Assembly (NCBI RefSeq): GCF_000150275.1
Contig: NW_002060963.1
Coordinates: forward strand, 381,502 to 445,501
Reading direction: 5' to 3'
Source: Trichoplax adhaerens
Taxonomy: Eukaryota; Animalia; Placozoa
DNA length: 64,000 bases
The notes beneath the pieces were generated by a model. It was given only the letters and a program-made list of their open reading frames with translations. It made no database searches and was not told where the DNA came from. Shown piece after piece: positions 1,640 to 22,175 of the stretch (position 1 is the stretch's first letter; every line of letters begins with the position of its first letter). The translations under genes were made by a program, and so were the position numbers.

Positions 1640-4600
1640 TTACTTGATTTTTCTTCGGACTGACACTTTTATGTGGAGAATTACTTTTCCCACGAGTTTG
1701 CAATTTTGAATTGTTCCCAACATGGCTTGAGAAGACATCGAAGCTGGCACCAGGTATAATTTTAGGAAGTACCATAGCTTCCTTTTTATTCTTAATTTTT
1801 TTTTTAGAATCTTCACAAGCATAAGTACGAGTTAACTTGGGTAATTGAGTTTGTGCTCTTCCATTCTTATTCTCTGACTACAGCATAGATATAATCAACG
1901 AATTAGTATTAGAAATACAGCCTAATTTTATCATAAATTGAAATACAAACAAAAGCATCACACAAGGCATATTAATTGAAATCGAATATTATAGACGATA
2001 GCTTAACTGCACTGCCTTTATCGATTTTGAACGAAATGCTTTACATTAGCAACACTCTTTCGACTATCTCTCATGCCTTACTAAGTTACTATACCTTTGA
2101 TGAATCACAAACTTTATTTGATCGTTTCAATCTCTTGAGTTTTCGCTACATGTCATGCAAAGTCGTTTATTAATTTAATAGACGTTATTTGAAGCAATTA
2201 GAAACGAATATAAACGAGTATCGATTTATTAATGTAGTGATAGACACCACCAACAATTATTTTATTTTTACGCTATTTTATCGAATACAGGTGCTGAATA
2301 TTAAGTCAAATACTGCTACCTTTTTACGCTTTTTGGGGGGTCTTTTATTTTCACTAAATTCACAGTCGCATAGCCTTTCATCTTTTTCATGCGTCTGCTT
2401 ACCTTCAGGCACCTGTAACGAAACAAAGATGTATCTCATAAATAACTACCGATATGCTTTTGCTTCAGGGCATCGAAATGAAATTAAACATAATAAAGCT
2501 CAAATTCAGCTTTTACAGTACCCGATTAAGTTGATGTCTTTGTATTTCTAATTCAGGTTTAGGAGACTCATTAGCATGTTGCGATGTTCTGCAAGTATCG
2601 GTAGTTTTTCTCGTAACATCTGATCCTGCAATAGCACATCCAGTTCCTGAAGACTTTGCATTAGGACATTTGGAAACACTGCATTCACCCAAAATAACTC
2701 AAATCAGTATCTAATCCTATACGTATATGCAAGCAATCTAACCTAACATTATGCTAATATTATAGAATTTTTCCAGGATTGGCTGTTCAATCTCTGGTAA
2801 TTCAGAACTTTGAGGCTTTTATATAGCATTACAAGCTTCGTTGGTGCAAATTATTAACAAATGTATAGCCAAGTCTACATACTGAATATAGTAAGAATCA
2901 CAACATACTTTCTATGACATTTAGTATCAGTTAATTAATGGCTAGGTGTTAACATACGATTCATTACTCAACAAAATTATATCATTAATGATGCAATAAT
3001 AAATTAACAGTCACAAGAACATATAAAATATTCGCAGTTCAAAATGGCCGGCCAATCTAAATATATGTTATTTGTAACCGTAATGCAATATTTACCGAAT
3101 CTCTTCGAAATAGAGACATTGCAGTGCTTCTTTTGCTGAAATTCTAAGTAAACAATCAAAAGTATTAAGTTACAATCATACTAGTAATTGCAAGTTTACT
3201 GTTATTAAAACTCAGATTAACCTATTAGCTGGATCATAGCAACATAATTTCGTAATTATTGATACACATTCAACGGATGCATTTGGTAAACAATTTGCAA
3301 GTCCTTTACCAACTTGATGATCAAAGTTAAAATTAATTATTTCTAAATCTTCGCATTTTCTAGATAAAAAATAGCTGTTAAGGGAAACATCGATGCCAGC
3401 AAACATTTTCTAAAATTACCGGCTTTAGTTACAAATTAGTATAATTATAGTCAATATTGCTTTAAACCATGAGAAAATATCTATCTATCTCTAAGATGGA
3501 TAGATTTCACTACCATATCAGTAGAGAAATTAATCTATAAATCGATTATAGTCAATCAATAGCGCCGGACAAGATAAAAAAAAATAATTAAATAATTAGC
3601 GTACTCCTTAAATTTCGTTAAGACATCATCGGCTGGCGTGCCCAGAATATTATGAATCTTAGTAATTTGATCACCCTCATTTATCCCGAAAAATAGTCGA
3701 CGTGAGCTAGAAGGAAAGACGGTAAATATGAAATATTGATATAACAAATTCGCTATGATTACTATGGTCTTGGTCATTTTATAAATCGTTGCATTAGCGT
3801 AAAACATCACTGATAAAGACTTACGTTATCATTTCAAACATAATGCATCCAATACTCCATTCGTCTACCTTGCATGTATAATAGCCACTGGTTAATAAAC
3901 ATTCAGGAGCACGATACCTAGATGGTAGTTAGATAATAGTAGAAGTAAAGAACATTTTCTAGAGGTGATAGTACTCGTAGAGTAATTCAAACTCAAAATG
4001 CACAAATGGATCATTAAATTATAGTTTGAGAATAATCATGAGTATGCTGAAGTTCTCCTTCTATTTTTAGTCTTACCATAGACATGAAGGACGGTCAAGG
4101 TAAGGAAGTGGTGAATAACTGCTACGGGAAAATTCAAATCCTGTCAGTTTTACAACACTGCCTTTAACCAGAATATTTTCAGGCTTGATATTATCATGGA
4201 AAATATCATTGCTGTAAGCGAAGAAGAAATAAACAAAGCACTCCATAATTATATTAAATGGCATACATCTAGATTTAATAATCGAAAGCAAGATAAAAAC
4301 GGGATTAAGAAGTAAGGTTGGGTAAGCTTATCAGTAGAATTGATAGTATTCATTTTTCTAGCTTATCCATAAAGAAGAATACATATTTTCAGTTTTTCAT
4401 ACCTATGCATGTATTCGACAGCCTTAAGTAGTTGCCAAACGTAAGAAGTAATTTTATCCTTTGATAACTGATTACTGAAGCCTACTCATTAAGAACAAAT
4501 AAAAATTATTTACAGAGAGCAACTGCTGCATTAATTTCAAATTAATTTGAACAGTAAGATTATATTCTATTTAGGACATAGTAATAGGTAAAGAACTTAA

Positions 4601-6593
4601 ACAAATGAAATTTTATGTAAGATAGTAACAGAAAACCTTACTGCACAAATAAACGAGACCCAATACTATACAAACCTTTAATTAATTGATCCAAGTTTAT
4701 TTCTATTAATTCTGTAATTATCCAGGCCGAACCAGTTTCGGTTGCACTATTGCACATTGAAGTTAATATTATTTTTTAATAAAATCAAGGACCTACAACT
4801 ACCTAAATGACGCAACGTTAGCGCAAAGTACGGTATTCGAAGTTCATTTATTCGTGAAAGATTCTAAAACTACCCTTCTTAGTAGTCGTATGAAATACTA
4901 ATCAAGAGAGCAGCGTCTAGCATATAATTCCTTAAAGCCACTAGTACAACTTTACAATATATAGTAAAACAAAATTTAAATATTCTTTCAATTACTTTGG
5001 AATGCATATACAAACTACAGAACAGAATTACATTAAAACAGATTGAAAGAGGCATCTAATCAAACTTAAACTACTTAACAATTAGAGCTAATATCAAAGC
5101 TTTTAGTAACAACTTAACCTATATTTCTTTTAAAATAGGTGTTACACCTTAGAAGTAGACAAACTACTATCAATAATATAGCTATAAAATCTCCATCCTA
5201 TTAAATATAGAAAACTTTAACTGTACTTATCGTTCAAATAACTAGAGCGAAAATGATAATTTCGTGATATACAGTAAGGCCATTATACCTTGTTCAAGCT
5301 GACTAGAGAGATCAGAAGTTATCATAATGCACAGTAGCTATATTGATGAGTAGTGTAGGACTACGGATATCATAAATTATAGTAATCACGGAAGTAGTTA
5401 CTATTTTGAGTCAAACTACATACAAAATATCGTGGATAAACCTGACTATTAACTTATTGGGCTTTTGATTCCCTCGATGTGATATTGCTTTGACTTGTGT
5501 AACATAAATTTAGGTATCATCTTATTTTCCCTGTAAGTATTCAAAATGTGAACTTACTAGAGAACTTGCCGTAACTGAACAACACTCGGATGTCCGGATA
5601 ATCGCTTTAGCGCTTGAACTTCGACCAAACATTGAAATTTACTGCGACTGTATTTCGTCATAAAGGGAAAGTTGTGGATTTAGAATATTAATGTGATCTA
5701 ATGTTATTATGTACTGTTTACAGTTAATTAACTAAAATTTTTCACATTAATATGCCCTTCGGTATAAAGAAGGATAACGTACTTAGATTGAAGCTATCGA
5801 TCAAATGCCATCTTAGTCCTCTTACTAAGAGTATTTAATAATAACAATAATATTAATAGTATTTCCATTAGGCATAGTATGGTTCAGCTACAACTGCATT
5901 CATTGAATTCTAAAATTTTATTCTTTATTATCATTTCTGATTAGGGTATATAACAAATATTAAAAGTAATAAGTTTATCATTAGCTACTTAGCTAATAAT
6001 TGAAAATTGGAGAAGATATTGATAAACTGAATAGAATACTGTTCGTTCAAGATGATAATAGTATATCAATGTTGCGGAGACAAGCTCCGAAATAATAATT
6101 ACCGAGTTAATTAAAATATCTAATTTAAATTGTTATTTGCTCCAGTAGTTCAATAAATGTTAATCTATTACCCGTTAGTAACTTATTTGTGTAGTCAAGA
6201 GTTAGTTCAACTACAAAAGTCTCCTAAGTCAGTTAGGAACATGAGTACTACTGACATTAACATTTAAGACCCATTTACAAAGGCTGAATTGTAACACTCA
6301 AGCATATAATTTATATATTTTCACACGGATTAAGAGTACGGTAGTTTAGATATTGATATCACCTGAGAAACAATCCAGTAAATGTAGTCTTTACAATTAT
6401 CACCTTATAGAATCACATGCCATGGTTTGCATTGTTAGCAATTTTCCCATCTACATTCACAAATTATATTCTTACCTATTGTACCGTTGCTTCATCTTCT
6501 TGCATGAATAATGAAACTGTTCTTTAATCAGATAGCATTTACGTAAACCCGGGAAAGCATTTTCGTAATTGCTATTCGATAGTAGTCCATAAC
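1640..6593 (-). CDS. MOK-like pseudokinase (divergent tandem paralog of MOK), multi-exon; 3' end and exons at ~2500-2850 uncertain
   Basis: Exons match those of the MOK gene at 15.6-22.2 kb one-for-one with the same intron phases through the kinase domain: 6593-6476 ([38 protein letters not shown]), ~5647-5558 ([13 protein letters not shown]), ~4746-4676, ~4481-4403 ([13 protein letters not shown]), 4211-4077 ([18 protein letters not shown]), ~3917-3825 ([13 protein letters not shown]), ~3707-3605, ~3359-3222, ~3143-3096. Tail exons are at ~2413-2320 (RPPKKRKK), ~2145-2095 and ~1877-1644 ([11 protein letters not shown]). No stops were seen in the kinase exons. Confidence 0.85.
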
Positions 6594-8489
6594 CTAGATC
6601 GAATAATATAATAAACATAAATTTTCTACATAATAAAGCAAGTATTTGTTAATTTTGCAATTTTTTTGACAAAGCTTATCGCATTCTTCATATCATATCA
6701 TTTTATTACTTTCACTAATTCAAATATTTGTTATCAATAGTGGTGATAAGTTATTAATATCTTTCCCGATATCTAAGTCTGTAAATAATAAGCCCGATTC
6801 AAGTAAATCATTTCCGCATAAGTCATCAAAAATTTTTGTTATATGAAATTATGTAAAAGTTATTGGTATGCCTATGTGTGTAATCTGTTAAGTTGCGATC
6901 AAGTTCTACACAATGTCAGTACACTGCAATTATTTTTCATAGTTCAAATCAATATCAAGATGCTTGTTAATAAAGCTACTAACTGAATTAATTCTATTTG
7001 CGGTTCTCAATATATCATTCTAAATTTACTTTAACAAATTTATGTCCAATAGAATTCTTTTTCTGTAAAATAGCTGCAAATCTTATAACTGCAGGATAAT
7101 CTGTTATCAGTATCTCGAATTATACCACATATAAAATTCGCTGTAGTGAAGTAATTCACTCCATTGCATTGCTAAAATAAAGAGCATCTTCTATACTTTA
7201 TGGAATGATATTGCAATCAATACTAGACTTCAAGTCGTCGGCTTTATGATATGGATACATTCTAATTAGTATACTTTACTTTTAAGTATCATAAGCTAAA
7301 AGTACGTCACTGTGGCACATTCTTAAAGAAGAGATGACGAATAAATATAAGATAAATGATGATTTGATTGGATAACTTCAGGGCATATATTACGATAATT
7401 ATTTGATGATGAATTCTATCAAACTGAGCTACTAACCTTGTTTTTTAAAATATTGGCCTTGATTTGTTTCGATTTGAACATATAAAAGAAATCAAATTGA
7501 TATGTTAGATTATTTTTGTCCTATTACAACTAGATAAGGGTTAGTAGTACAATGATTTATGCAAGACTTTACGCAGCAGGTTTATCTGTCAATATACATC
7601 TACGTAATAACACGTATACATTAATATAAGATTAATAACTTTAAGGTATTCTGACTAATTACTTCAATACATAATGCTTAAATTGTCTGCATGGACTGAT
7701 ATTTCTTGTCCAGAATCGCCTCGAGAAACTTTCATAAGATCACCAATTACTAAATTTTTGTGGTTTATAGCCATAACGTTGACAACCGATAATACGCTTT
7801 TATGAAATACTTTACTAAGATGCATCACAAGTTCTTTAAACGATAAATACTGCAATGCAAGTTTACATATGGTTGTATTAAGATATGTAATCATGCTTAG
7901 ATTAGCGTCAGTATAATGCCCTCAAAATTTGTTTAATACTGGTTTGTTATCTCTATCATAAATATGATAAGACTAGATTTAAAGTAAAGCTATAATATCT
8001 GTAATGGTATGCAATATCTACAATTTTTAATACTCAAGACCCTCATATAACTCCCAAACTGTATCGTAAACCTTTACATTCTTCTCTGCAAGTTATGCAA
8101 CTAACCCATAGGCATACGTTTACTTTAGATGTTACGTATGCTTTCAGATACGCAAACTGATACCGATGTCTGTCATTCAATCATTATCAATAATTTATAT
8201 TATCTTATAATTACCTCTGGACAATGCATGCTACGTATACATAACAAAGATCATAGTAAGTAGGATGTAGGTACAGTATATCACAAAGTTACTATATCAT
8301 TAGTTCTGCGAGATAATTAATTGGGAGTTATAAGTAACTTCTAATCAGATATAGAGCAAGATTTGTCTACAATATTCTAACGAATATGCCGATTAATGCA
8401 ATTGGGAAATAATAATGTGACTTTTGAATATGACTGCATGTCATTTGTGTTTAATAGATCATAAAAGAACAGTTTATTTCACGACTTAC

Positions 8490-8805
8490 TGTCTAATCGA
8501 TTTTTTGCGGCTATAGCTGTAGTTTCTAGATCTTCACCAATTTCTTTGATGTTATTGATTTCACTATTCTTTAGAATTTCACAAAATGCAAAGAAATCTT
8601 CATCGCTTCTCGTTTTTAGAATCTTTATAAACTGACTCATCTGCGCCGTATTCCTTTGAGTATCATTGCTTAATTTATCTATTTGAGTATCTGAAAAGAT
8701 CGATGCATCGATAAGATCATATTTAATTTCGTCGAAGGCTACGGATCTGCAGAGAAATCGACGCTTATCCTGAATAATTTTCCTCAGGTACTTGCTTAAA
8801 ATCAT
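8490..8805 (-). CDS. CARD (death-fold) domain exon
   Basis: The ORF from ATG 8805 (MILSKYLRKIIQDKRRFLCRSVAFDEIKYDLIDASIFSDTQIDKL..RNTAQMSQFIKILKTRSDEDFFAFCEILK) has the CARD pattern L-x-x-x-x-IFS, x-FL-x-IL-x-x-R and F-x-x-F-x-x-x-L. It ends at a perfect GTAAGT donor (8489-8484) in phase 1. Confidence 0.65.
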
Positions 8806-11431
8806 TTTAAACCAGGCCACAAGAAGGTAACCCTAGGATAAAATAGAAGATGCTAATAAGCCACAACTTTCATGAAGCTTTATACAAGCCATTAAATGTA
8901 ATAAACAATATTATACAATAATATTATACATAATTTCAAGGTATTGATAAAATCAGATTTAAAAGGTTACAATGATTTAATCAGACGAATTGCAATGCCT
9001 AATTAATTATTAAAAGATGTCAGCAAATCTGCTGAACTCGATGAACAACTACTACAATTTACTTGCGTAACCGATATCTAAATCTAAGCCAAGCTATCTT
9101 AAATTGGGTAGAACAATAATATATATAATTCCATGAGACTACTGTAATTTTAAAAAGTAATAAATTAGACTAAAAGGGCAAATGTATCTTTAGTAATGTC
9201 ATTTCGGATAGGGAATATAAATAATATAATGCGATACATTATCAACGGTCTTGCTTTCGATGTCAATTCGGCATCTATTTTTTTAACTGTGTGAATCAAT
9301 GTTACAATAAAATTAACAATAAGCTTTAATACTCAGGCTAATGACGTAAACATCGAGACTATGGCGTTGACATAGCTCCCAGAATAAGTGTCTTTATTCG
9401 ACATGGAACGTCATTAACATTGCCGCCGGCATATTTCAAAAGTAGAAGAATTTGCTCCGTCATGGTTAAAACTATACGTCGATATTCAACGTTATTACAA
9501 TTATTTTACTCTTACAGGCGTACTAGTATACTGGTTACGGCCAAAATTCGTAATCGGCCATTATGCTTTACTCATAATACCCTGCGAAAGCCCAATAATT
9601 TATTGATATTAAGGTATTTCGCACTTGTAAGCCCAAATCAATCATGAAATATTTGATTAATCAGTTTAATACCGAAAATCGTTTTATTGGAGGAAAGCAT
9701 TTCTCGGATACAAATACAGTATAGCTATTAGCAAATTAAACTTGCAATTTATGGAAATAGGCCGTACATCTTAGAGAGGTTTTGTGTAAGCACAGTATTA
9801 TGAGAGTGATTGCTAGAAATCATCGATTCCGAAATTTATCGCTAATTACGCGTATAATTAATTATACTACAGGAATATAGCGCAAGCATATTCAAAAATT
9901 TGATATACGAACTATATTCTAACACAATTGTGGGTAGTTTATTTTATCGAAAATTCAAGCTTTAATCCTTCATTACTGTATGCAATACTAATTTTATAGC
10001 ATTCGCCTCTTAAAGTCGTAATATTAGCAGCTGAATTTTAACCACCTGTTTGCTACTTCAACTAAAGGAAGATTAGACCTATGTAATAGCATAAACCATA
10101 GCTTTGAAATGTTATAGCTGCTAAAATTATTATATTTGCATAAACTTGCGCAGGCCTTGACAATTATCTGCAAACCATAAATTTGTAGCGCGATAGCTGC
10201 TGAAGTTATTTCATTGGCATAAACTAGTGCAGACTTTGACAATTATCAATCACATGATTGAAATCTAAGACAGATAGGCTAATAAAACTGAATAAATCGA
10301 CTTAAGAGGACATTTTCCAAACTAGGAAATGGTCTAATCAAACGAAAAATAGCTAGTCTTTTGATATATATACAACGTTTCTGTGATTTTACCGCAGCTG
10401 TCGATTCTTAATCAATTACAAATATAATTCACCCTCTCCTTTTAGGCTCCTTTTTACGTTTTGAATGGATGCAAATGAAGCAGTGAAATGAAATTTAAAA
10501 TAGAAAGAAGGCCAATCACCAACTCAAACTGTATGGGCGCTAATTACTGATGAATAAGAAATAAGATAGTGAAAATCTTCGTATATGTAACCTACCAATG
10601 GCTATTTAATCTTAATTAGTCAATTAATCTGATCTGTTCAAATCCCCTTATTTTAATTTGTTAATAATATAAATTCAACAGATTACAACGAAGTTTATTA
10701 ATTATCCCTTTAAATTTATTGCCTTTGCCTTACCTTTGTTAATGGTACACATATAAAATTCGCTCATCCAAAGCATTCAGAATTGACCAAAGTTGGGCAG
10801 CAATGCTAATAATAATGATCTCTCGATCCCGCTGTACATCAAAATAAAGTTATCTTAAATTGTAATAGACTAAATAGAAGATAGACTAGCACGTGATCGC
10901 CTATCCGGGAATAGCCGCCATCATTAACTTTTATTTTTTGAATTCAAACTTTTAATCGGACAAGTGATCATTTAATCATGACTATCTACAAACAAAGTAA
11001 GTCTTGGGTGTGGTAAAGGGATTGTTCTTTGACGATTTGTATCCATTAAAAGTTCACAATTTGTCTTTATACACCTGCGAGCTAATTCAACTAGACAATA
11101 GGAAGAAGTATTTATTTTACATGTTCAAAGAAAGAAACCTAATTGCTAACAAAATGATTGGGTAATTAATTCATCTAATTTTCAGAACAGTTGGTAAAAC
11201 AATATAGTTTTGTATTTAATAATTATTAAGCACGCCGACTACGAATATACTATGGCCGCTTTTCAGACATTGACCGTAGAAACTGAAAATTTACTAGGTT
11301 AGAAGTTAGACATCTACTTTATGATTCTTATGCCATTCATCCTTAAGGATTATCCGCTATATACATCATCCCATATTGCCAAGGGCCAATTATTCACAAT
11401 GCAGCCTGATTGCATGCCGATTTTTGGTATT

Positions 11432-11471
11432 TACCCTAACCCTTACCCTAACCCTAACCCTAACTCTAACT
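11432..11471. repeat. Short interstitial telomere-like (CCCTAA)n tract
   Basis: taccctaacccttaccctaaccctaaccctaactctaac: about 6 imperfect CCCTAA units. Confidence 0.8.
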
Positions 11472-14322: not shown

Positions 14323-14372
14323 NNNNNNNNNNNNNNNNNNNNNNNNNNNNNNNNNNNNNNNNNNNNNNNNNN
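14323..14372. other. Assembly gap (50 N)
   Basis: Run of exactly 50 N. Confidence 0.99.
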
Positions 14373-15647: not shown

Positions 15648-18600
15648 TTATTGCCTATCAATAGCTGGCAGTTTATGGCCTTTAAGTCCTTGACGATAAT
15701 GTTGCTTCTTTTGCGGCATTAGTAACACTTGAGACTACGTAAAATATTAAAGGACGAATATTAGCGCTTACAAGGCAAAGAATTGATTAAGTGTTAAAGA
15801 CAGTATGATACCAAAGTAGAACTACAAATTAATTTTGAATTAAATCAAAGCTCTACTAACGTAGTTACTTTTCTACCAACGAGCTCTAATGTACTTTAAA
15901 ATAGCAGTGAAAAATAACTTAATAAGCTTAAGATAGTCAACTCCTATTAATAGTAACCATATGAAATTACCTGATGTTGTGGCTTCATATTTACACGATG
16001 AGAATTACGAATAGTTTTAGTTTGAGTTATTCCATATGAATATTGAGATTTTGAATTGTTATTAAGATGCTTAGTATATGTATCAAAACTTGCACCAGCT
16101 TGAATCTTAGGTAGTGACATAAAATTTCCTTGTTTATTGCTTTGTTCAAGACCTTTATGAGCATGTTTTAGAGTTAACATAGGTAGTTTAGCTTGCGGCT
16201 TTATGCTATCCTCCGTTGACTAAATATAAATAAGCACACAAAGATAACGTTATTAGAAATTAGTATCCAGCTCAGTATTGACCTTAAAAATTGATGCCAG
16301 CATTATACTATAAAACTAGAAATGAAGATGTTACTGCCATAATGGAAATGAAAATTTAAATATCTACAGTATAGTTTTTTAGTGCTTCGTATATCGATTT
16401 CCATAAAAGACGCTGCTCATATAGGAATCTTAGTATATTTCCTTGGTCTAACCTGTGACACAACACCAGCTTCATCAGATCGCTTCGATTTTTGGGCTTT
16501 TCGCTGTAGGAAAGAATAAAATTTAGGACATTTTTAGCAAAATCACAGCATGAAGGTTGGTTGCTTACTTTATTCTATTTCTATAGCAATCCTATCGATT
16601 CCTCATAAGTTTATGGCAATGATTCTACTTTATACTATGAGTAGGATATTGGTAACAAATAAAAGCTAAATTCCGCTCTCACCTTTTTACGTTGTCTTTT
16701 CTCTTTTTCTAGCTCATCTAATTCATGTTTAAATAAGTTTTTATCTTCTTCTTTACGTATCTGGTGATCTTCATCAGGTTGTGGCGTTCCAATAGTAATG
16801 GTTCTCTCAATTTCTAGTGCTGCAGCAGCTAATTCAGCGCGTCGTTGTCGAGCGGCACGGCGTTCTGCATCGCTACATTTCACAAAATAATAACATTTAC
16901 TCTCTAATTCAACCCAAACAAATAGCTATATAAGAGCCAATATTTAATTGAGTTTTTGCAATTATTTGCTATTCCGATTAAGTTATAAACTGTCGCTAAA
17001 GCCGAAGAATGGTTAATTAATTATAGTCAGTAAGTAACTCATGCAATTTCCTGTACGTGTAATATAGAAATAGCCGCCAACTATGCCGTACTGCCCTTTT
17101 ACTTTACAATTATATCACATAATTTTATCATACTTACCGAATCTCTTTAAAATAGGGATGTTTTAATGCTTGTCTTCCGGCAATTCTAATTCATTCAAAG
17201 AAATATAAAAGCGTTTAATTTACATCATCATCAGGTTAATATTGAGTAGAACTTGTTAACCTCTCATCTGGATCGTAACAGCATAATTTCTTAATTAAGG
17301 AAATACATTCAGGGGATGCATGGGGTAAGTATCTTTCAATTCCTTTACCAACTTTATGAGGGAAGTTGAAATTGATATTGGGATTATGGCATTTACTGCG
17401 TAGAGAAACATTTAATTAGTCAAAAAATGTCTAATACGAACATAAAATTTCTTCATCTTTAGCACTGAATACAATAGTTATAATTAATTATTACTATCAC
17501 AAATATTAATATTGAGACACAACAGAGAACCTAATTTGGGCCAACAGATAGATTATGGTATTTTCTATACCAGTAAATATTTATTGAGGAAATATATTAC
17601 AGTACTGGTAATAACTATTATGGTTAATAATACTGGTGTGTAGTACTAGTAAGAATTTGATAACTCTACAGAGAAACAGGCTTTCATATTATCAAAATAA
17701 AATGCTTTCCTATCACTTGTTACGGTCCATCGATAGGACTGTAAGACATATTTAACTTACTCTTTAAATTTTTGCAATAGATGATCAGGAGGAGTACCCA
17801 TGATATCATGGATTTTAGCAACTTGATCAACTTCATTAGCTCCAGGAAAAAGTGGATGCAAACTAAAGGACAAGCAGCAGTTATTAAATATTGAAAATAG
17901 AAGCATGCTACAGCGATAGTTATTTTGATAGGGAAATAACTATACTTGCTCAGAAAGGCCAACTTACGTCATAATTTCGAACAGAACACATCCAACACTC
18001 CACATATCCATTTTATAAGTATAATAGCCATCTGTTAATAAACATTCCGGAGCACGATACCTGCAACATTGTCGAAAAAATGATAGAAATGAAGGAATTT
18101 TCTATATTTAAGGTGATAGACCGCTCTAGACTAATATACGATCAAGATTTTACGGCAAGATTAATGTGATCTTGAAATTGATTTCAGTAGTTTTAATTTT
18201 GTATTTTGACTTACCATCGAGTTGAAATGTATTCTGTATAAGGAGGCTTAGAATAAACACTACGGCAAGAGCCAAAATCAGCTAATTTAATAAGACTATC
18301 TTTTAACAAGATATTCTCAGGCTTAATGTCACGGTGGAAAATGCCATTTCTAAAAGTAATTTAAACCAGTAAACGTACTATTTAATCAGTTTTCTTTAAA
18401 AGAATATCTATAAGTATTGGCTAAATAATTTACTGCTAAGATTAATGATTAAGGTGAAGATTAGAGTCAATGATATTCATAATTCCATCTCTTTCTCTAA
18501 CGGAAAAAAAGTAAGATTTTTAGTTCCTCTTACCTGTGCATGTAGTCCATCGATTTTAATAATTGCCACATGTATCTCTTAACTTTATCTTCTGATAGAT

Positions 18601-21600
18601 AATCGCGCAAACCTGTCAATGAATGAACAAATTAAATTATCAATCATTAATTAAATGAATAAGAAATGTGTCCATGTTAGTATCCTCCATTAGAAAAATT
18701 GTAGTTATCGTGGCTTGTAAATGATTCGTTAGGTTAATCTATGTGTCTGGATTACAGATATTTCAAAAATAACTCAAGATTGCATACAAACCTCGTATTA
18801 ACTCGTATAAATTCATATCCATTAATTCACAGACTAGCCATAACGAACCAGTTTTTTTCTCACTATAGCATTATGAAAAGTGCACCAATAAAGTTAGAAT
18901 AAGTCATTTTAACGTTGTGCCAGAGCTATAATAACTCTAGGATGTAACAATACGGTACTTTGAAACGTGCAAGCTTGATTTTTTACCCTGTATTTTTGTC
19001 AATGTGTATCATACAAAGTGAATAAAGTGATCATTATCCTATGTGTAATGTTATGAATCTTAAGTATAGCGATTAAAGTCATAACGACATCGTTCTATTT
19101 GACGTTCTAAATTATCCTATTATCCATAAATAGACTATAAAGAAAATTTAAATTATTGGTATGCAAGACTATGGTCTTAAATCAAGTGAAGAGGGCTATA
19201 TATAAAAAAGTGATACTGTTGAAAGATTTCTCTATGAAACGAAGTTAGCCTTCAATATAGTCCCGGTAATAGATAAATTTTTATCATATCAACAACGCTT
19301 TGCTTTAATAATATGTACAGGAAGAGCTTTTTATTATTGTTATAGTACTATGATAAAATTTACTAGAGGATAATATAATTATAATACAGTCCTGTAGAAA
19401 TCGCTTTCAAAAATAACAGACATAGTACTAAATTTGCTTGCGTTAGCAGCGCAAAAGTTTGGTTAATCATATTATATACGGTATATTTGCTATTTATCAT
19501 TCTAATTATCTGTTAGAAAGGTGCCATCAAATCAACTGAGATATTAAGATGGCTCAAAGTATGAAATAAGGGTTATTATCGTTACGTATATGATATAGTC
19601 TTACCGAATGTAGGATTATACTATTTTACGTTTCTAATTTCTTATGTTAGTCATAGCATATGCTGAGGGTATAATATGAGATAAGATTTGAATATTTCAT
19701 ATTGTAGGCGGCTATCAAGTTAGCTACGGTATTTTCTCTCCATTTTTCTGTGATAGAATAACTATTGAGATTGAATAATCATTACAAATTAATTGTTAAT
19801 CAACTATATCGCATTATTTGGAATTTATCTGCTATAATATCTTTCATCTCTAATCTTATGCTGCAATGACATGATAAATATGACCAACCCTTATCATATA
19901 AGCTGTAAGTGAAACTAGATCTCATTAAAATAAGTAGCGAGACAGAAAGAGTAATTAATAGTCGTCAATTTCAATCTGCATTGCAGCTGCAATTGAGGGC
20001 TATGGAATAAAAGTCAGTCGTTGTATTTTCATTAAATGACATCATGGAGGAAAATTGAAAATAAATCGATAATATTGAGCATTATTGTAGTGTATTTAGA
20101 ATATACTGTAACTATATTCTACTCTTAAATATAGACATCTTGTATTGCTCTTATATTTAGACAGATCTACAGTCCTCTTACTCTACATTCATATATAGAC
20201 TACTGTATTTAGTTATTACGGTACTCGCTGTTTTCTATAATCATCTGCTATTTTGTAACCTGTTATGGTATATGTTGTATCTAATTCCACAATCCTATTC
20301 TCTGCGTGTGCTCCATCTTTAAAACTATAAATACCGGCGATTTCTACCTCAGAGTTCATTAGCCTCTCAGTTAGTCTTCTAGTTAGTCTCTCACAATCTA
20401 ATACTTCTACTCGTTACTCACGACAGCTTGCACGCTGATCTACCGTAACTACCTCACTGTACTTCACATTACTAACCTACAATAAAGCATAACTTTTATA
20501 AACCCTTTGTTGTAATAATTGTAAATGGCGACTAAATCTCAATCCTCTGAGATATCGAACCCTCCATCACAATTATCATACTGATCAAGTAATTAGATGA
20601 GTTCATTATTAATCGACAGCCATTACTAGTACCTTGAACACACAATAAAGGCAAGCTTTACTGACAAGTAACTATGCAGTACAGATTGCTAATTTTGCTT
20701 TTATGGCTGATCAAATGTCTTATGACAGTTAATAATCATTAGCAGTATGCTAATAGCATGACCATGGTTAATAGGTCAATATATCAAGATTTCCTTGATT
20801 TACACAGAGACGGGTATAAATCAAGTAAAAAGCTAATCACAACTTACAAGACGACTTCCTTTAATTGAAGAACATTGGGATGGGATGATAATCGTCGTAG
20901 AGCTTGAACTTCACGCAAGTTATTTACTTGTTCCGTGCTATATATCATTTAAAGTAGAAATTCTCATTAATTATATAAAATTGCAACCTGATCCATCGCA
21001 AGTTATTAATATATATCATACTTTAATTTTAAACTAAAATAGCAAAGAAATACTACTACGATTGAAAATATCGATATATCACTCTAACATGCACTTTACA
21101 AATTATAATGGCTAATCTAATAGCCATAACATTGCCGTAATGCTGCAACCTTCAGCTTTCCCAATATGATATTTTAAGTATTGCCTTACGATAATGGTCA
21201 AGTAATCATTTGAGAGCCTATCATCACAGCATAAGTGTGCTAAGAATAGGATACGGTAATAAATATGATGTTCTTGTGATATGCTACACTAAAGCGTTTT
21301 TCGTAGAAATAAATAATATTAATCTAATGCAGTTGCTCGTTTCAATTACGGTAGATAAACATTTAGCTTGAATACTTTATCATCTACTGGCAAGTAAATA
21401 GTTTAATACCTCACGAGGAGATATCATTAAACACCGGTTCTAGGGTAAGGACTCTTAAGTATGGTATATAAAATATTATAATGGAGGCGATGATAATTTA
21501 CGACATTAGAGCATCGATTAACATAGCTATTATCCCTTTCTTTCAATAAACTTAAATAGATGAATATCTAGGACTGCAAATAGCACGTAGATGAATTTAG

Positions 21601-22175
21601 AATATAAAAATCGGCTAATCACGATCAATATGTCGCACTACTGATTGTAAATTCATGTATACCATGTAATGCTTATGAACCGAAAAAGACTTCGATTGTA
21701 AGTTTAATCTTTACCACAAAAATCGATTAAAATAGCATGACGGAATACACTTATCATAGCTATAGAAATTTTCAGCAACTATAAAGTAGTCGTTTAATAT
21801 TACTCTTCATTAGTTGGAAAATCATTCACAGCTTTCCGTTTGTTGCAAGAGTTTTTAATATGTCATTGCCGATGTTCCTACTCACGTTCACAATCATATC
21901 CCTACCTGTTATAGCGTTGCTTCATCTTCTTACACGCATAATAGGTGCCTTCCTTGATATGCTGGCATTTTAATACTTCTGAGAAGGTACCTTCTCCTTT
22001 TTTCGATAGTAATCTATAATCTAAGTAAAGTAGCACAGTAATATCAAGTATTCAAACATGAATTTAGAGACATTTATTTGTGCAATAAAAATACGAAAAG
22101 ATATTATTATCATAGTTGCAAAGATTAGTTCATAAGCTTTCCCATTAAAATAATTTTAATATACTTACTTTGCAT
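15648..22175 (-). CDS. MOK: MAPK/MAK/MRK overlapping kinase (MOK/RAGE), ~14 exons
   Basis: ATG CAA A|gt at 22175-22169. Exon 22020-21906 reads [31 protein letters not shown]. Later exons give [69 protein letters not shown]|[25 protein letters not shown] and ALKHPYF. The last exon ends KLPAIDRQ* (TAA 15650-15648). Confidence 0.93.
20261..20640 (+). mobile_element. Possible degenerate LTR with primer-binding site, inside a MOK intron
   Basis: Begins TGTTATG (20261), then TATAAATA (~20327), a CT-rich stretch, AATAAA (20481) and TGGCGAC (~20526), which is a Gypsy-type PBS start. No clean CA end or TSD was found. Confidence 0.3.

What the first reader, a model, noticed from the sequence alone, without database searches (positions are those of the whole stretch)
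1640..8805. Candidate chimeric CARD-pseudokinase built from a duplicated ciliary MOK kinase
Seen: a CARD-like ORF starts at ATG 8805 and ends at a perfect GTAAGT donor in phase 1 (8490/8489). The first kinase exon of the MOK paralog (acceptor 6595-6594) needs a phase-1 partner, and the direct join gives ..NRLD-S-YGLLS.. in frame. In the parent MOK, this slot is filled by a 7-nt ATG exon, and no clear counterpart was found in the paralog. Known: death-fold + kinase architectures (IRAK, RIPK1/2) use TKL-group kinases, whereas MOK is a CMGC ciliary kinase. Inference: exon shuffling created an N-terminal CARD + dead CMGC kinase adaptor, loosely analogous to IRAK-M, possibly acting in apoptosis or innate signalling.
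Basis: partly seen in the sequence, partly recalled or inferred. Interest (0 to 1): 0.85.

Follow-up and report, generated by a model that had tools for sequence, protein, structure and literature searches.

The report
Expressed CARD–dead-kinase fusion gene in Trichoplax
In the placozoan Trichoplax, a death-signalling CARD module of the Apaf-1 gene family is spliced in frame onto a catalytically dead copy of a MOK-like kinase, giving an expressed domain combination I found in no public protein set; what it does is untested.

Summary
Spliced contigs from four sequencing runs of four studies join the CARD exon donor (8490|8489) to the first kinase exon (6593). The join is not direct: it passes through a 21-nt micro-exon (7457-7437) that keeps the frame. 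The CARD exon is also not the first exon. It begins at an acceptor at 8832, behind a non-coding leader exon ending at 10734. ATG 8805 is still the start codon.

The 105-aa exon is a true CARD: Pfam hit above threshold, AF2 pLDDT 91.8, and best structural matches to Apaf-1 and caspase-9 CARDs. It belongs to a family of at least 38 CARD exons in this genome that normally head Apaf-1-like NB-ARC genes, one of which is the next gene downstream.

The kinase part is the only other MOK-like copy in the genome. All exon phases match the parent, at 55% amino-acid identity. The frame is open over 403 RNA-supported codons, which 0 of 20,000 neutral simulations achieved. The glycine loop, HRD aspartate, DFG aspartate and TEY motif are all lost.

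The fusion gene is therefore real and looks constrained. Its role as a non-catalytic CARD adaptor is inference. No protein carrying this CARD turned up in three database searches. This scan holds only first-reader notes on this same stretch, nothing on other DNA.

The parts
10734..10763 (-). 3' end of a non-coding leader exon (5' limit unresolved). It carries an in-frame TGA at 10766-10764 and an upstream ATG at 10752-10750.
   Evidence: The loose ends of the spliced contigs in X5, X8 and X10 match here, and the exon ends ..aacaaag|gtaagg.
8490..8832 (-). CARD exon: 5'UTR 8832-8806, start codon 8805-8803, 105 codons plus 1 base, phase-1 GTAAGT donor.
   Evidence: Contig pieces cover 8834-8489 in four runs. 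Pfam CARD hit. AF2 and Foldseek.
7437..7457 (-). 21-nt micro-exon linking the CARD exon to the kinase; it encodes (S)QYFKKQ(G).
   Evidence: Joints 7456->8489 and 6589->7433 in X5, X8, X10 and X11. Canonical ag|..|gt sites.
6476..6593 (-). Kinase exon 1: degenerate glycine loop (NYENAF in place of GEGTFS), VAIK lysine kept.
5558..5647 (-). Kinase exon 2: helix-C glutamate kept.
4676..4746 (-). Kinase exon 3.
4403..4481 (-). Kinase exon 4.
4077..4211 (-). Kinase exon 5: HRD->HDN, DFG->GFE, TEY->LPY.
3825..3917 (-). Kinase exon 6: APE motif kept.
3605..3706 (-). Kinase exon 7.
3222..3359 (-). Kinase exon 8. Its start is supported by the contig loose end at 3605; its end is predicted.
3096..3143 (-). 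Kinase exon 9 (predicted; same length and phase as the parent exon).
1644..2678 (-). Predicted C-terminal tail exons (2678-2522, 2412-2320, 1877-1644), homologous to the parent tail. The last exon and 3' end are unresolved.
   Evidence: This stretch was not covered by the laid reads.
15648..22175 (-). Parent MOK-like kinase gene with intact GEGTFS, HRD, DFG and TEY motifs; source of the duplicated kinase body.

Best explanation
One gene on the minus strand (leader exon ending at 10734, CARD exon 8832-8490, micro-exon 7457-7437, nine kinase exons 6593-3096, then tail exons) is transcribed and spliced into an mRNA. Its ORF starts at ATG 8805 and encodes an N-terminal CARD followed by a catalytically dead copy of the adjacent MOK-like kinase.

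Inferred origin: the standard 5' module of the placozoan Apaf-1-like family came to lie upstream of a tandem duplicate of the MOK-like gene. That module consists of a leader, an acceptor just before the ATG, and a CARD exon with a phase-1 donor. The MOK-like gene's first intron is also phase 1, so the join stays in frame. The duplicate lost its own start exon, and a 21-nt micro-exon now bridges the two parts.

Inferred function: the CARD docks the protein by CARD-CARD contacts onto Apaf-1-like or CARD-caspase assemblies, and the pseudokinase acts there as a non-catalytic scaffold, regulator or bait. The gene structure, expression and dead motifs are shown. The binding and the role are inferred.
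For: Splicing. Eight consecutive CT..AC (minus-strand GT..AG) joints were identical in contigs of X5, X8, X10 and X11, from four studies; X11 is a declared RNA-seq library. Exonic contigs stood at depth 26-132 against 2-9 for intronic ones. No retrocopy could mimic this: the genome holds only one 100% copy of the CARD exon and only two MOK-like copies.

Open frame. The frame is open over 11 exons and 403 codons, and every splice site is canonical.

CARD. Pfam hit. The family profile hits CED-3, Apaf-1 and RAIDD CARDs in the PDB. The AF2 model has pLDDT 91.8 and its top Foldseek hits are all CARDs, TM 0.75-0.88. The exon keeps every invariant or near-invariant family residue.

Family context. 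Homologues are CARD-NB-ARC proteins (TRIADDRAFT_61948; Trichoplax sp. H2 'Apaf-1') and a CARD-Death protein. The next gene downstream is a CARD-NB-ARC gene. In 9 of 9 paralogous CARD exons a GTRA donor lies in phase 1 at codon 103-106.

Kinase. Exon lengths and phases match the parent. Identity is 55% aa, pN 0.26 against pS 0.67, and 0 of 20,000 neutral simulations kept the frame. HRD->HDN, DFG->GFE, the glycine loop is lost and TEY->LPY.
Against: No protein-level evidence exists. No binding partner was tested. Conservation outside organisms A and B could not be examined. X5, X8 and X10 are only guessed to be RNA by the tool; I infer RNA from the splicing. Contigs cannot show minor isoforms, transcript ends, or that all exons sit on one molecule. 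About 600 nt of the leader and the last exon are unresolved. The pN/pS contrast is summed over both copies, so it does not isolate constraint on the paralog. The VAIK lysine and helix-C glutamate survive, so nucleotide binding or an atypical activity is not excluded.
Confidence: 0.7

Rival explanations
1. The chimeric transcript is real but functionless: a read-through or splicing by-product of a decaying kinase duplicate sitting behind a stray CARD exon.
For: No protein evidence. No annotated protein carrying this CARD was found. The catalytic motifs are gone. The mRNA has a long leader with an upstream ORF.
Against: Synonymous divergence from the parent is near saturation (pS 0.67), yet the frame is open and all splice sites are intact; 0 of 20,000 neutral simulations managed that. 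The CARD keeps every conserved family residue and folds confidently. Exonic contigs are deep in all runs.
Confidence: 0.1
2. The kinase domain is still active through a non-canonical mechanism, as WNK or CASK once looked dead, which would make this a CARD-recruited active kinase.
For: The VAIK lysine, the helix-C glutamate, the K-P-E-N part of the catalytic loop and the APE motif are kept.
Against: The catalytic aspartate (HRD->HDN), the metal-binding aspartate (DFG->GFE) and the whole glycine loop are lost together.
Confidence: 0.08
3. The main product is a CARD-only inhibitor, made when the intron after 8490 is retained and translation stops at TGA 8481-8479; the kinase exons would be mostly untranslated.
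For: A stop lies 3 codons into the intron. Low-depth contigs cover parts of that intron, 8163-8470.
Against: Those intronic contigs stand at depth 3-4 against 26-132 for the spliced form. No protein of 58-184 aa with this CARD is on record. This reading does not explain the preserved kinase frame.
Confidence: 0.05
4. Assembly artefact: the contigs are chimeras of two separate transcripts.
For: All evidence comes from Logan contigs, not raw reads.
Against: The same joints, at canonical in-frame splice sites, occur in four runs of four studies and in two organism labels. Contig 5 of X11 alone spans kinase exon 1, the micro-exon and the CARD exon.
Confidence: 0.02

Closest known systems
IRAK3 (IRAK-M) and IRAK2: death domain plus pseudokinase adaptors of the Myddosome
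   Same: An N-terminal death-fold module followed by a kinase fold without the catalytic aspartate. The presumed logic is the same: recruitment into a death-fold oligomer, with the dead kinase acting as a scaffold or brake.
   Different: IRAKs carry a Death domain rather than a CARD, and their kinase belongs to the TKL group. Here the kinase part is a copy of a CMGC-type MOK-like gene. No common ancestry; this is a convergent architecture.
RIPK2: kinase plus CARD
   Same: The only well-known CARD-kinase combination; it couples to CARD-bearing NOD receptors.
   Different: In RIPK2 the CARD is C-terminal and the kinase is an active TKL enzyme. Kamm et al. 2019 (PMC6321704) report no RIPK1/2 orthologue in Trichoplax sp. 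H2.
Placozoan Apaf-1-like CARD-NB-ARC paralogues (TRIADDRAFT_61948; Trichoplax sp. H2 'Apaf-1')
   Same: The same CARD family, 30-40% identical. The same first-coding-exon design: ATG at residue 1 and a phase-1 donor at codon 103-106. One member is the adjacent gene.
   Different: Behind the CARD lies a dead kinase instead of NB-ARC, WHD and repeats. No NB-ARC remnant is left in the window.
MOK (RCK family: MAK/ICK/MOK), regulators of ciliary length
   Same: The kinase body is a duplicate of the adjacent MOK-like gene, with identical exon phases and lengths and 55% identity.
   Different: It has lost the glycine loop, HRD aspartate, DFG aspartate and the TEY activation motif, and it has gained a CARD. 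The MOK assignment of the parent rests on memory and was not tested here.
Plant ZAR1 with its RKS1/ZED1 pseudokinases
   Same: A pseudokinase working as an adaptor or bait for an NB-ARC (STAND) cell-death switch. This is what the fusion might work like.
   Different: An analogy only. Those pseudokinases are RLCK-XII proteins that bind the LRR and have no CARD. Nothing here tests a bait function.

Membership tests
CARD (Pfam PF00619, death-fold superfamily) | Sequence match to the family model above the curated threshold. | tested here: met
   25.7 bits against a cut-off of 23.9, E=1.2e-5, model positions 2-74 of 85. The family profile hits CED-3, Apaf-1 and RAIDD CARDs at E 2e-7 to 5e-4.
CARD (Pfam PF00619, death-fold superfamily) | Six-helix antiparallel bundle superposable on solved CARDs. 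| tested here: met
   AF2 pLDDT 91.8, pTM 0.83, helices H1a/H1b to H6. The top Foldseek hits are CARDs (Apaf-1, caspase-9, CED-4) with TM 0.75-0.88 and rmsd 1.5-2.1 Å. Foldseek E-values are weak (0.02 and above), as is usual for small helical bundles.
CARD (Pfam PF00619, death-fold superfamily) | Homotypic CARD-CARD binding. | not tested
   No partner was singled out, so no complex prediction was run. This needs a binding assay.
Protein kinase fold (Pfam PF00069), active enzyme | Glycine-rich loop GxGxxG. | tested here: not met
   The parent has GEGTFS; the paralog has NYENAF.
Protein kinase fold (Pfam PF00069), active enzyme | Catalytic aspartate of HRD and metal-binding aspartate of DFG. | tested here: not met
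   HRD->HDN and DFG->GFE in exon 4211-4077.
Protein kinase fold (Pfam PF00069), active enzyme | VAIK lysine and helix-C glutamate. | tested here: met
   The lysine in ..SCKKMK.. and the glutamate in ..VEVQAL.. are retained.
Pseudokinase derived from the adjacent MOK-like gene | Homology over the whole kinase domain with shared gene structure. | tested here: met
   Nine exons with the same phases and lengths (two differ by 3 nt); 55% aa identity over 189 gap-free codons. These are the only two such copies in the genome. The Pfam Pkinase hit on one exon alone is below threshold (21.8 bits).
RCK family / MOK orthology of the parent | TEY activation motif and best reciprocal similarity to MOK. | tested here: inconclusive
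   The parent has TEY in ..[16 protein letters not shown]... The single-exon PDB search returns GSK3, CDKL and MAPK, that is CMGC-type kinases only.
IRAK / RIPK (TKL-group death-fold kinases) | A TKL-group kinase domain. | tested here: not met
   The kinase part is a duplicate of a gene with CMGC-type relatives. The locus works like these families at most; it is not a member.

The most novel reading that the evidence does not exclude
The CARD-pseudokinase is a dedicated bait or adaptor of the expanded placozoan Apaf-1-like (NB-ARC) cell-death machinery. On this reading the dead MOK-like domain mimics a kinase that stress signals or microbial factors act on, and through its CARD it triggers or blocks an apoptosome-like assembly. 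That would be an animal counterpart of the plant ZAR1-pseudokinase guard system, arisen independently in one of the earliest-branching animal lineages.
Probability: 0.1. Interest if true: 0.85.

Novelty: new variant of a known kind. Interest (0 to 1): 0.55.

Why it matters
Placozoans lack Toll-like and NOD-like receptors with LRRs and lack RIPK and complete IRAK genes, yet they have many Apaf-1 paralogues whose wiring is unknown (PMC6321704). An expressed gene that welds this family's CARD to a dead kinase offers a concrete, testable handle on that wiring.

It is also an unusually clear case of exon shuffling. Donor family, recipient gene, matching intron phases and a bridging micro-exon all lie within 25 kb. 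The architecture itself (N-terminal CARD plus a pseudokinase of CMGC origin) matched no protein in the databases searched here.

Its weight is limited by the absence of any functional or cross-genus evidence.

Tried and rejected
1. Direct CARD-to-kinase join (8490->6593). It is arithmetically in frame but appears in no contig; all four runs use the micro-exon.

2. Only low-depth unspliced contigs lie there.

3. An N-terminal extension upstream of ATG 8805. It is excluded by the in-frame TGA at 10766-10764, and all family members start with M at the same position.

4. NB-ARC remnants between or behind the exons. tblastn with four Apaf-1-like proteins found none in the window.

5. Sequence homology of the micro-exon to the parent's 7-nt ATG exon. 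MAFFT and a local alignment place the former ATG just 5' of the new acceptor, but 419 of 500 shuffles score as well. The correspondence is therefore positional only.

6. An annotated fusion protein. Nothing was found with the CARD exon as query (candidates 58-184 aa) or with the CARD regions of P0003 and P0034, which share seven 5-residue words with it (candidates 290-1181 aa). The representative library held no hit above 38% identity.

7. Naming the 'one kinase with a Death-like domain' that Kamm et al. mention for Trichoplax sp. H2. It is not identified in the held supplements, so whether it is this gene is open.

8. Subfamily assignment of the kinase from single exons. PDB and ESM Atlas gave only generic kinase or CMGC-type hits.

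9. Steps left out because joined models may not be sent to search tools: the Pfam scan, structure prediction and database search of the whole spliced protein.

10. No complex prediction was run, because I claim no specific partner.
Full report
**Organism and locus.** The window is G000:C1394:381502-445501 of a 105.6-Mb assembly. I confirmed that: P0003, NCBI's TRIADDRAFT_61948, is encoded at 100% identity in locus L007 of the same assembly. The window has about 32% G+C and intron-rich genes.

**The sequence features.** On the minus strand, ATG 8805 opens a 105-codon exon ending ...GAC A|gtaagt. Downstream lie nine kinase-like exons (6593-3096). Each has a counterpart in a second gene at 22020-17138 of the same strand. 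Exon lengths are 118/115, 90/90, 71/71, 79/79, 135/135, 93/93, 102/102, 138/135 and 48/48 nt, with identical phases. The upstream copy, the parent, carries GEGTFS, HRD, DFG and TEY. It starts with a 7-nt ATGCAAA|gtaagt exon at 22175-22169. Whole-genome searches with two kinase exons find only these two copies.

**Transcript evidence.**
- I laid the contigs of four runs from four studies on 3500-9400, a stretch of 5,901 letters. X5, X8 and X10 carry organism label A. X11 is a declared RNA-seq library of organism label B.
- All four runs show the same eight joints, every one CT..AC on the plus strand, which is GT..AG for a minus-strand gene.
- The CARD exon donor (8490|8489) joins a 21-nt micro-exon (7457-7437), which joins kinase exon 1 (6593). 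The chain then continues exon by exon to 3605. A loose end there matches the start of the next exon at 3359.
- Single contigs of 3.8-3.9 kb (X5, X10) carry the whole chain.
- Exonic contigs stand at depth 26-132 and intronic ones at depth 2-9.
- The genome holds no second copy of the CARD exon (the next best hit is 40% identical) and no third kinase copy. A processed DNA copy therefore cannot explain the joints, so these contigs derive from spliced RNA.
- The micro-exon keeps phase 1, and the junction reads ..NRLD-SQYFKKQG-YGLLS...

**The 5' end.** The CARD exon begins at an acceptor (cctag|G, 8832), 27 nt before the ATG. The contigs carry a further 640-680 nt upstream. The last 30 nt of this leader map to 10763-10734, in front of a gtaagg donor. 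In the CARD frame the leader has a TGA at 10766-10764 and no later ATG, so ATG 8805 is the start. This fits the family, whose members all begin M-[VIG]-[LV]-S at residue 1.

**The open frame.** Joining the 11 RNA-supported or homology-supported exons inside a script gives 403 codons without a stop. All sites are ag|..|gt. Three further tail exons (2678-2522, 2412-2320, 1877-1644) are predicted from homology with the parent tail. The last exon is ambiguous. The joined protein was used only for this frame check.

**Is the first domain a CARD?** Yes.
- Pfam PF00619 scores 25.7 bits, above the 23.9-bit gathering threshold.
- A scan of 1.84 billion representative proteins returns 33 homologues at 25-38% identity.
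- Of the nine homologues I scanned with Pfam, the three longer ones of about 480-530 aa are CARD-NB-ARC(-WHD-APAF1_C) proteins and one is CARD-Death. Two are named TRIADDRAFT_61948 and 'Apoptotic protease-activating factor 1 [Trichoplax sp. H2]'.
- A profile of the family hits the CARDs of CED-3, Apaf-1 and RAIDD in the PDB.
- An AF2 model built on that alignment has pLDDT 91.8. Its best Foldseek matches are all CARDs: Apaf-1, caspase-9 and CED-4, with TM 0.75-0.88 and rmsd 1.5-2.1 Å.
- The exon keeps all invariant and near-invariant family residues.

**Origin.**
- The genome has at least 38 paralogous CARD exons. The nearest lies 4.5-5 kb beyond the window's start on the same strand and heads a CARD-NB-ARC gene.
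- In nine of nine family exons examined, a GTRA donor sits in phase 1 at codon 103-106. The mapped model of TRIADDRAFT_61948 uses exactly such a donor, with a first coding exon of 310 nt in phase 1.
- Most of these exons also show a pyrimidine tract and an AG 20-45 nt before the ATG, like the acceptor used here.
- The parent kinase's first intron is phase 1 too. The standard 5' module of an Apaf-1-like gene could therefore splice in frame onto a tandem duplicate of the kinase gene. That is classical phase-compatible exon shuffling.
- No NB-ARC remnant survives in the window.
- The micro-exon occupies the position of the parent's ATG exon, but its sequence similarity is not above chance.
- Both halves are old. 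The CARD is at most 40% identical to any paralogue. The kinase copies differ at 34% of nucleotides, with synonymous differences near saturation (pS 0.67).

**Dead but constrained.** Compared with the parent, the paralog has lost the glycine loop (NYENAF), the catalytic aspartate (HDN), the metal-binding aspartate (GFE) and the TEY motif (LPY). It keeps the VAIK lysine, the helix-C glutamate, the KPEN residues of the catalytic loop and APE. Over 189 gap-free codons pN is 0.26 against pS 0.67. When the parent sequence was mutated at random to the same divergence, 0 of 20,000 trials kept the frame open, even without indels. Of the two differences that tabulates for organism label B in the CARD exon, I worked out by hand that one is synonymous and the other is F17Y. 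The locus is therefore not a decaying pseudogene.

**Mechanism.**
- Shown: a spliced, abundant mRNA; an intact ORF; a CARD fold; loss of the catalytic residues.
- Inferred from what CARDs do in general: the CARD docks the protein onto other CARDs, most plausibly those of the many Apaf-1-like proteins or the CARD-caspases described for placozoans (PMC6321704). The pseudokinase would then serve as a scaffold, brake or bait.
- I put the gene model near 0.9 and this functional reading near 0.4-0.5.

**Comparison with what is known.** Death-fold-plus-kinase proteins are known: IRAKs, RIPK1 and RIPK2. All of these use TKL kinases, and the dead ones (IRAK3, IRAK2) carry Death domains. RIPK2 has a C-terminal CARD and is active. 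By descent this locus belongs to none of these families. It is a convergent architecture built from a kinase with CMGC-type relatives. Lineage-specific shuffling of death-fold domains is itself a known theme, for example in amphioxus (PMC2575513).

Kamm et al. state that among the Trichoplax sp. [quoted passage not shown] It may or may not be this gene. Three searches of a 5.8-billion-cluster protein collection found no protein of 58-184 or 290-1181 aa carrying this CARD. The fusion therefore appears to be unannotated there.

**Verdict.** The architectural interpretation is supported. The function remains a hypothesis. I rate it a new variant of a known kind, of moderate interest.

Noticed in passing
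window 10752-10734 joined to 8832-8807 (minus strand): A 14-codon upstream ORF starts at ATG 10752-10750 in the leader exon, crosses the splice junction, and stops at TAA 8809-8807, one base before the main ATG. This layout would suit termination-reinitiation control of the CARD-pseudokinase.
   Followed up: partly
G000:C1394 about 374000-377000 (window -7500 to -4500; loci L006, L014), minus strand: The next gene downstream is an Apaf-1-like CARD-NB-ARC gene with the P-loop GMAGSGKS. Its CARD exon is 38% identical to the fusion's.
   Followed up: partly
window about 11433-11470: A short interstitial telomere-like repeat (about six TTAGGG-type units on one strand) lies about 700 nt upstream of the leader exon's end, close to where the contigs' 5' ends would fall if the leader is unspliced.
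   Followed up: no
window 14323-14372: An assembly gap of 50 N lies in the spacer between the parent kinase gene and the fusion gene. The true spacer length and content are unknown.
   Followed up: no
window 2412-2320 (predicted tail exon): The predicted tail carries a basic stretch ..RPPKKRKK.. that looks like a classical nuclear localisation signal. The parent tail is basic at the same place. The exon is not RNA-verified here.
   Followed up: no
L005 (G000:C1385:91353-94643), protein P0002: The public gene model extends the CARD exon to a phase-0 donor at codon 116. A GTAAGT donor in phase 1 lies at codon 104, as in the rest of the family, so the model may be mis-spliced.
   Followed up: no
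That would be a second pseudokinase fusion in the neighbourhood. I did not examine it.
   Followed up: no
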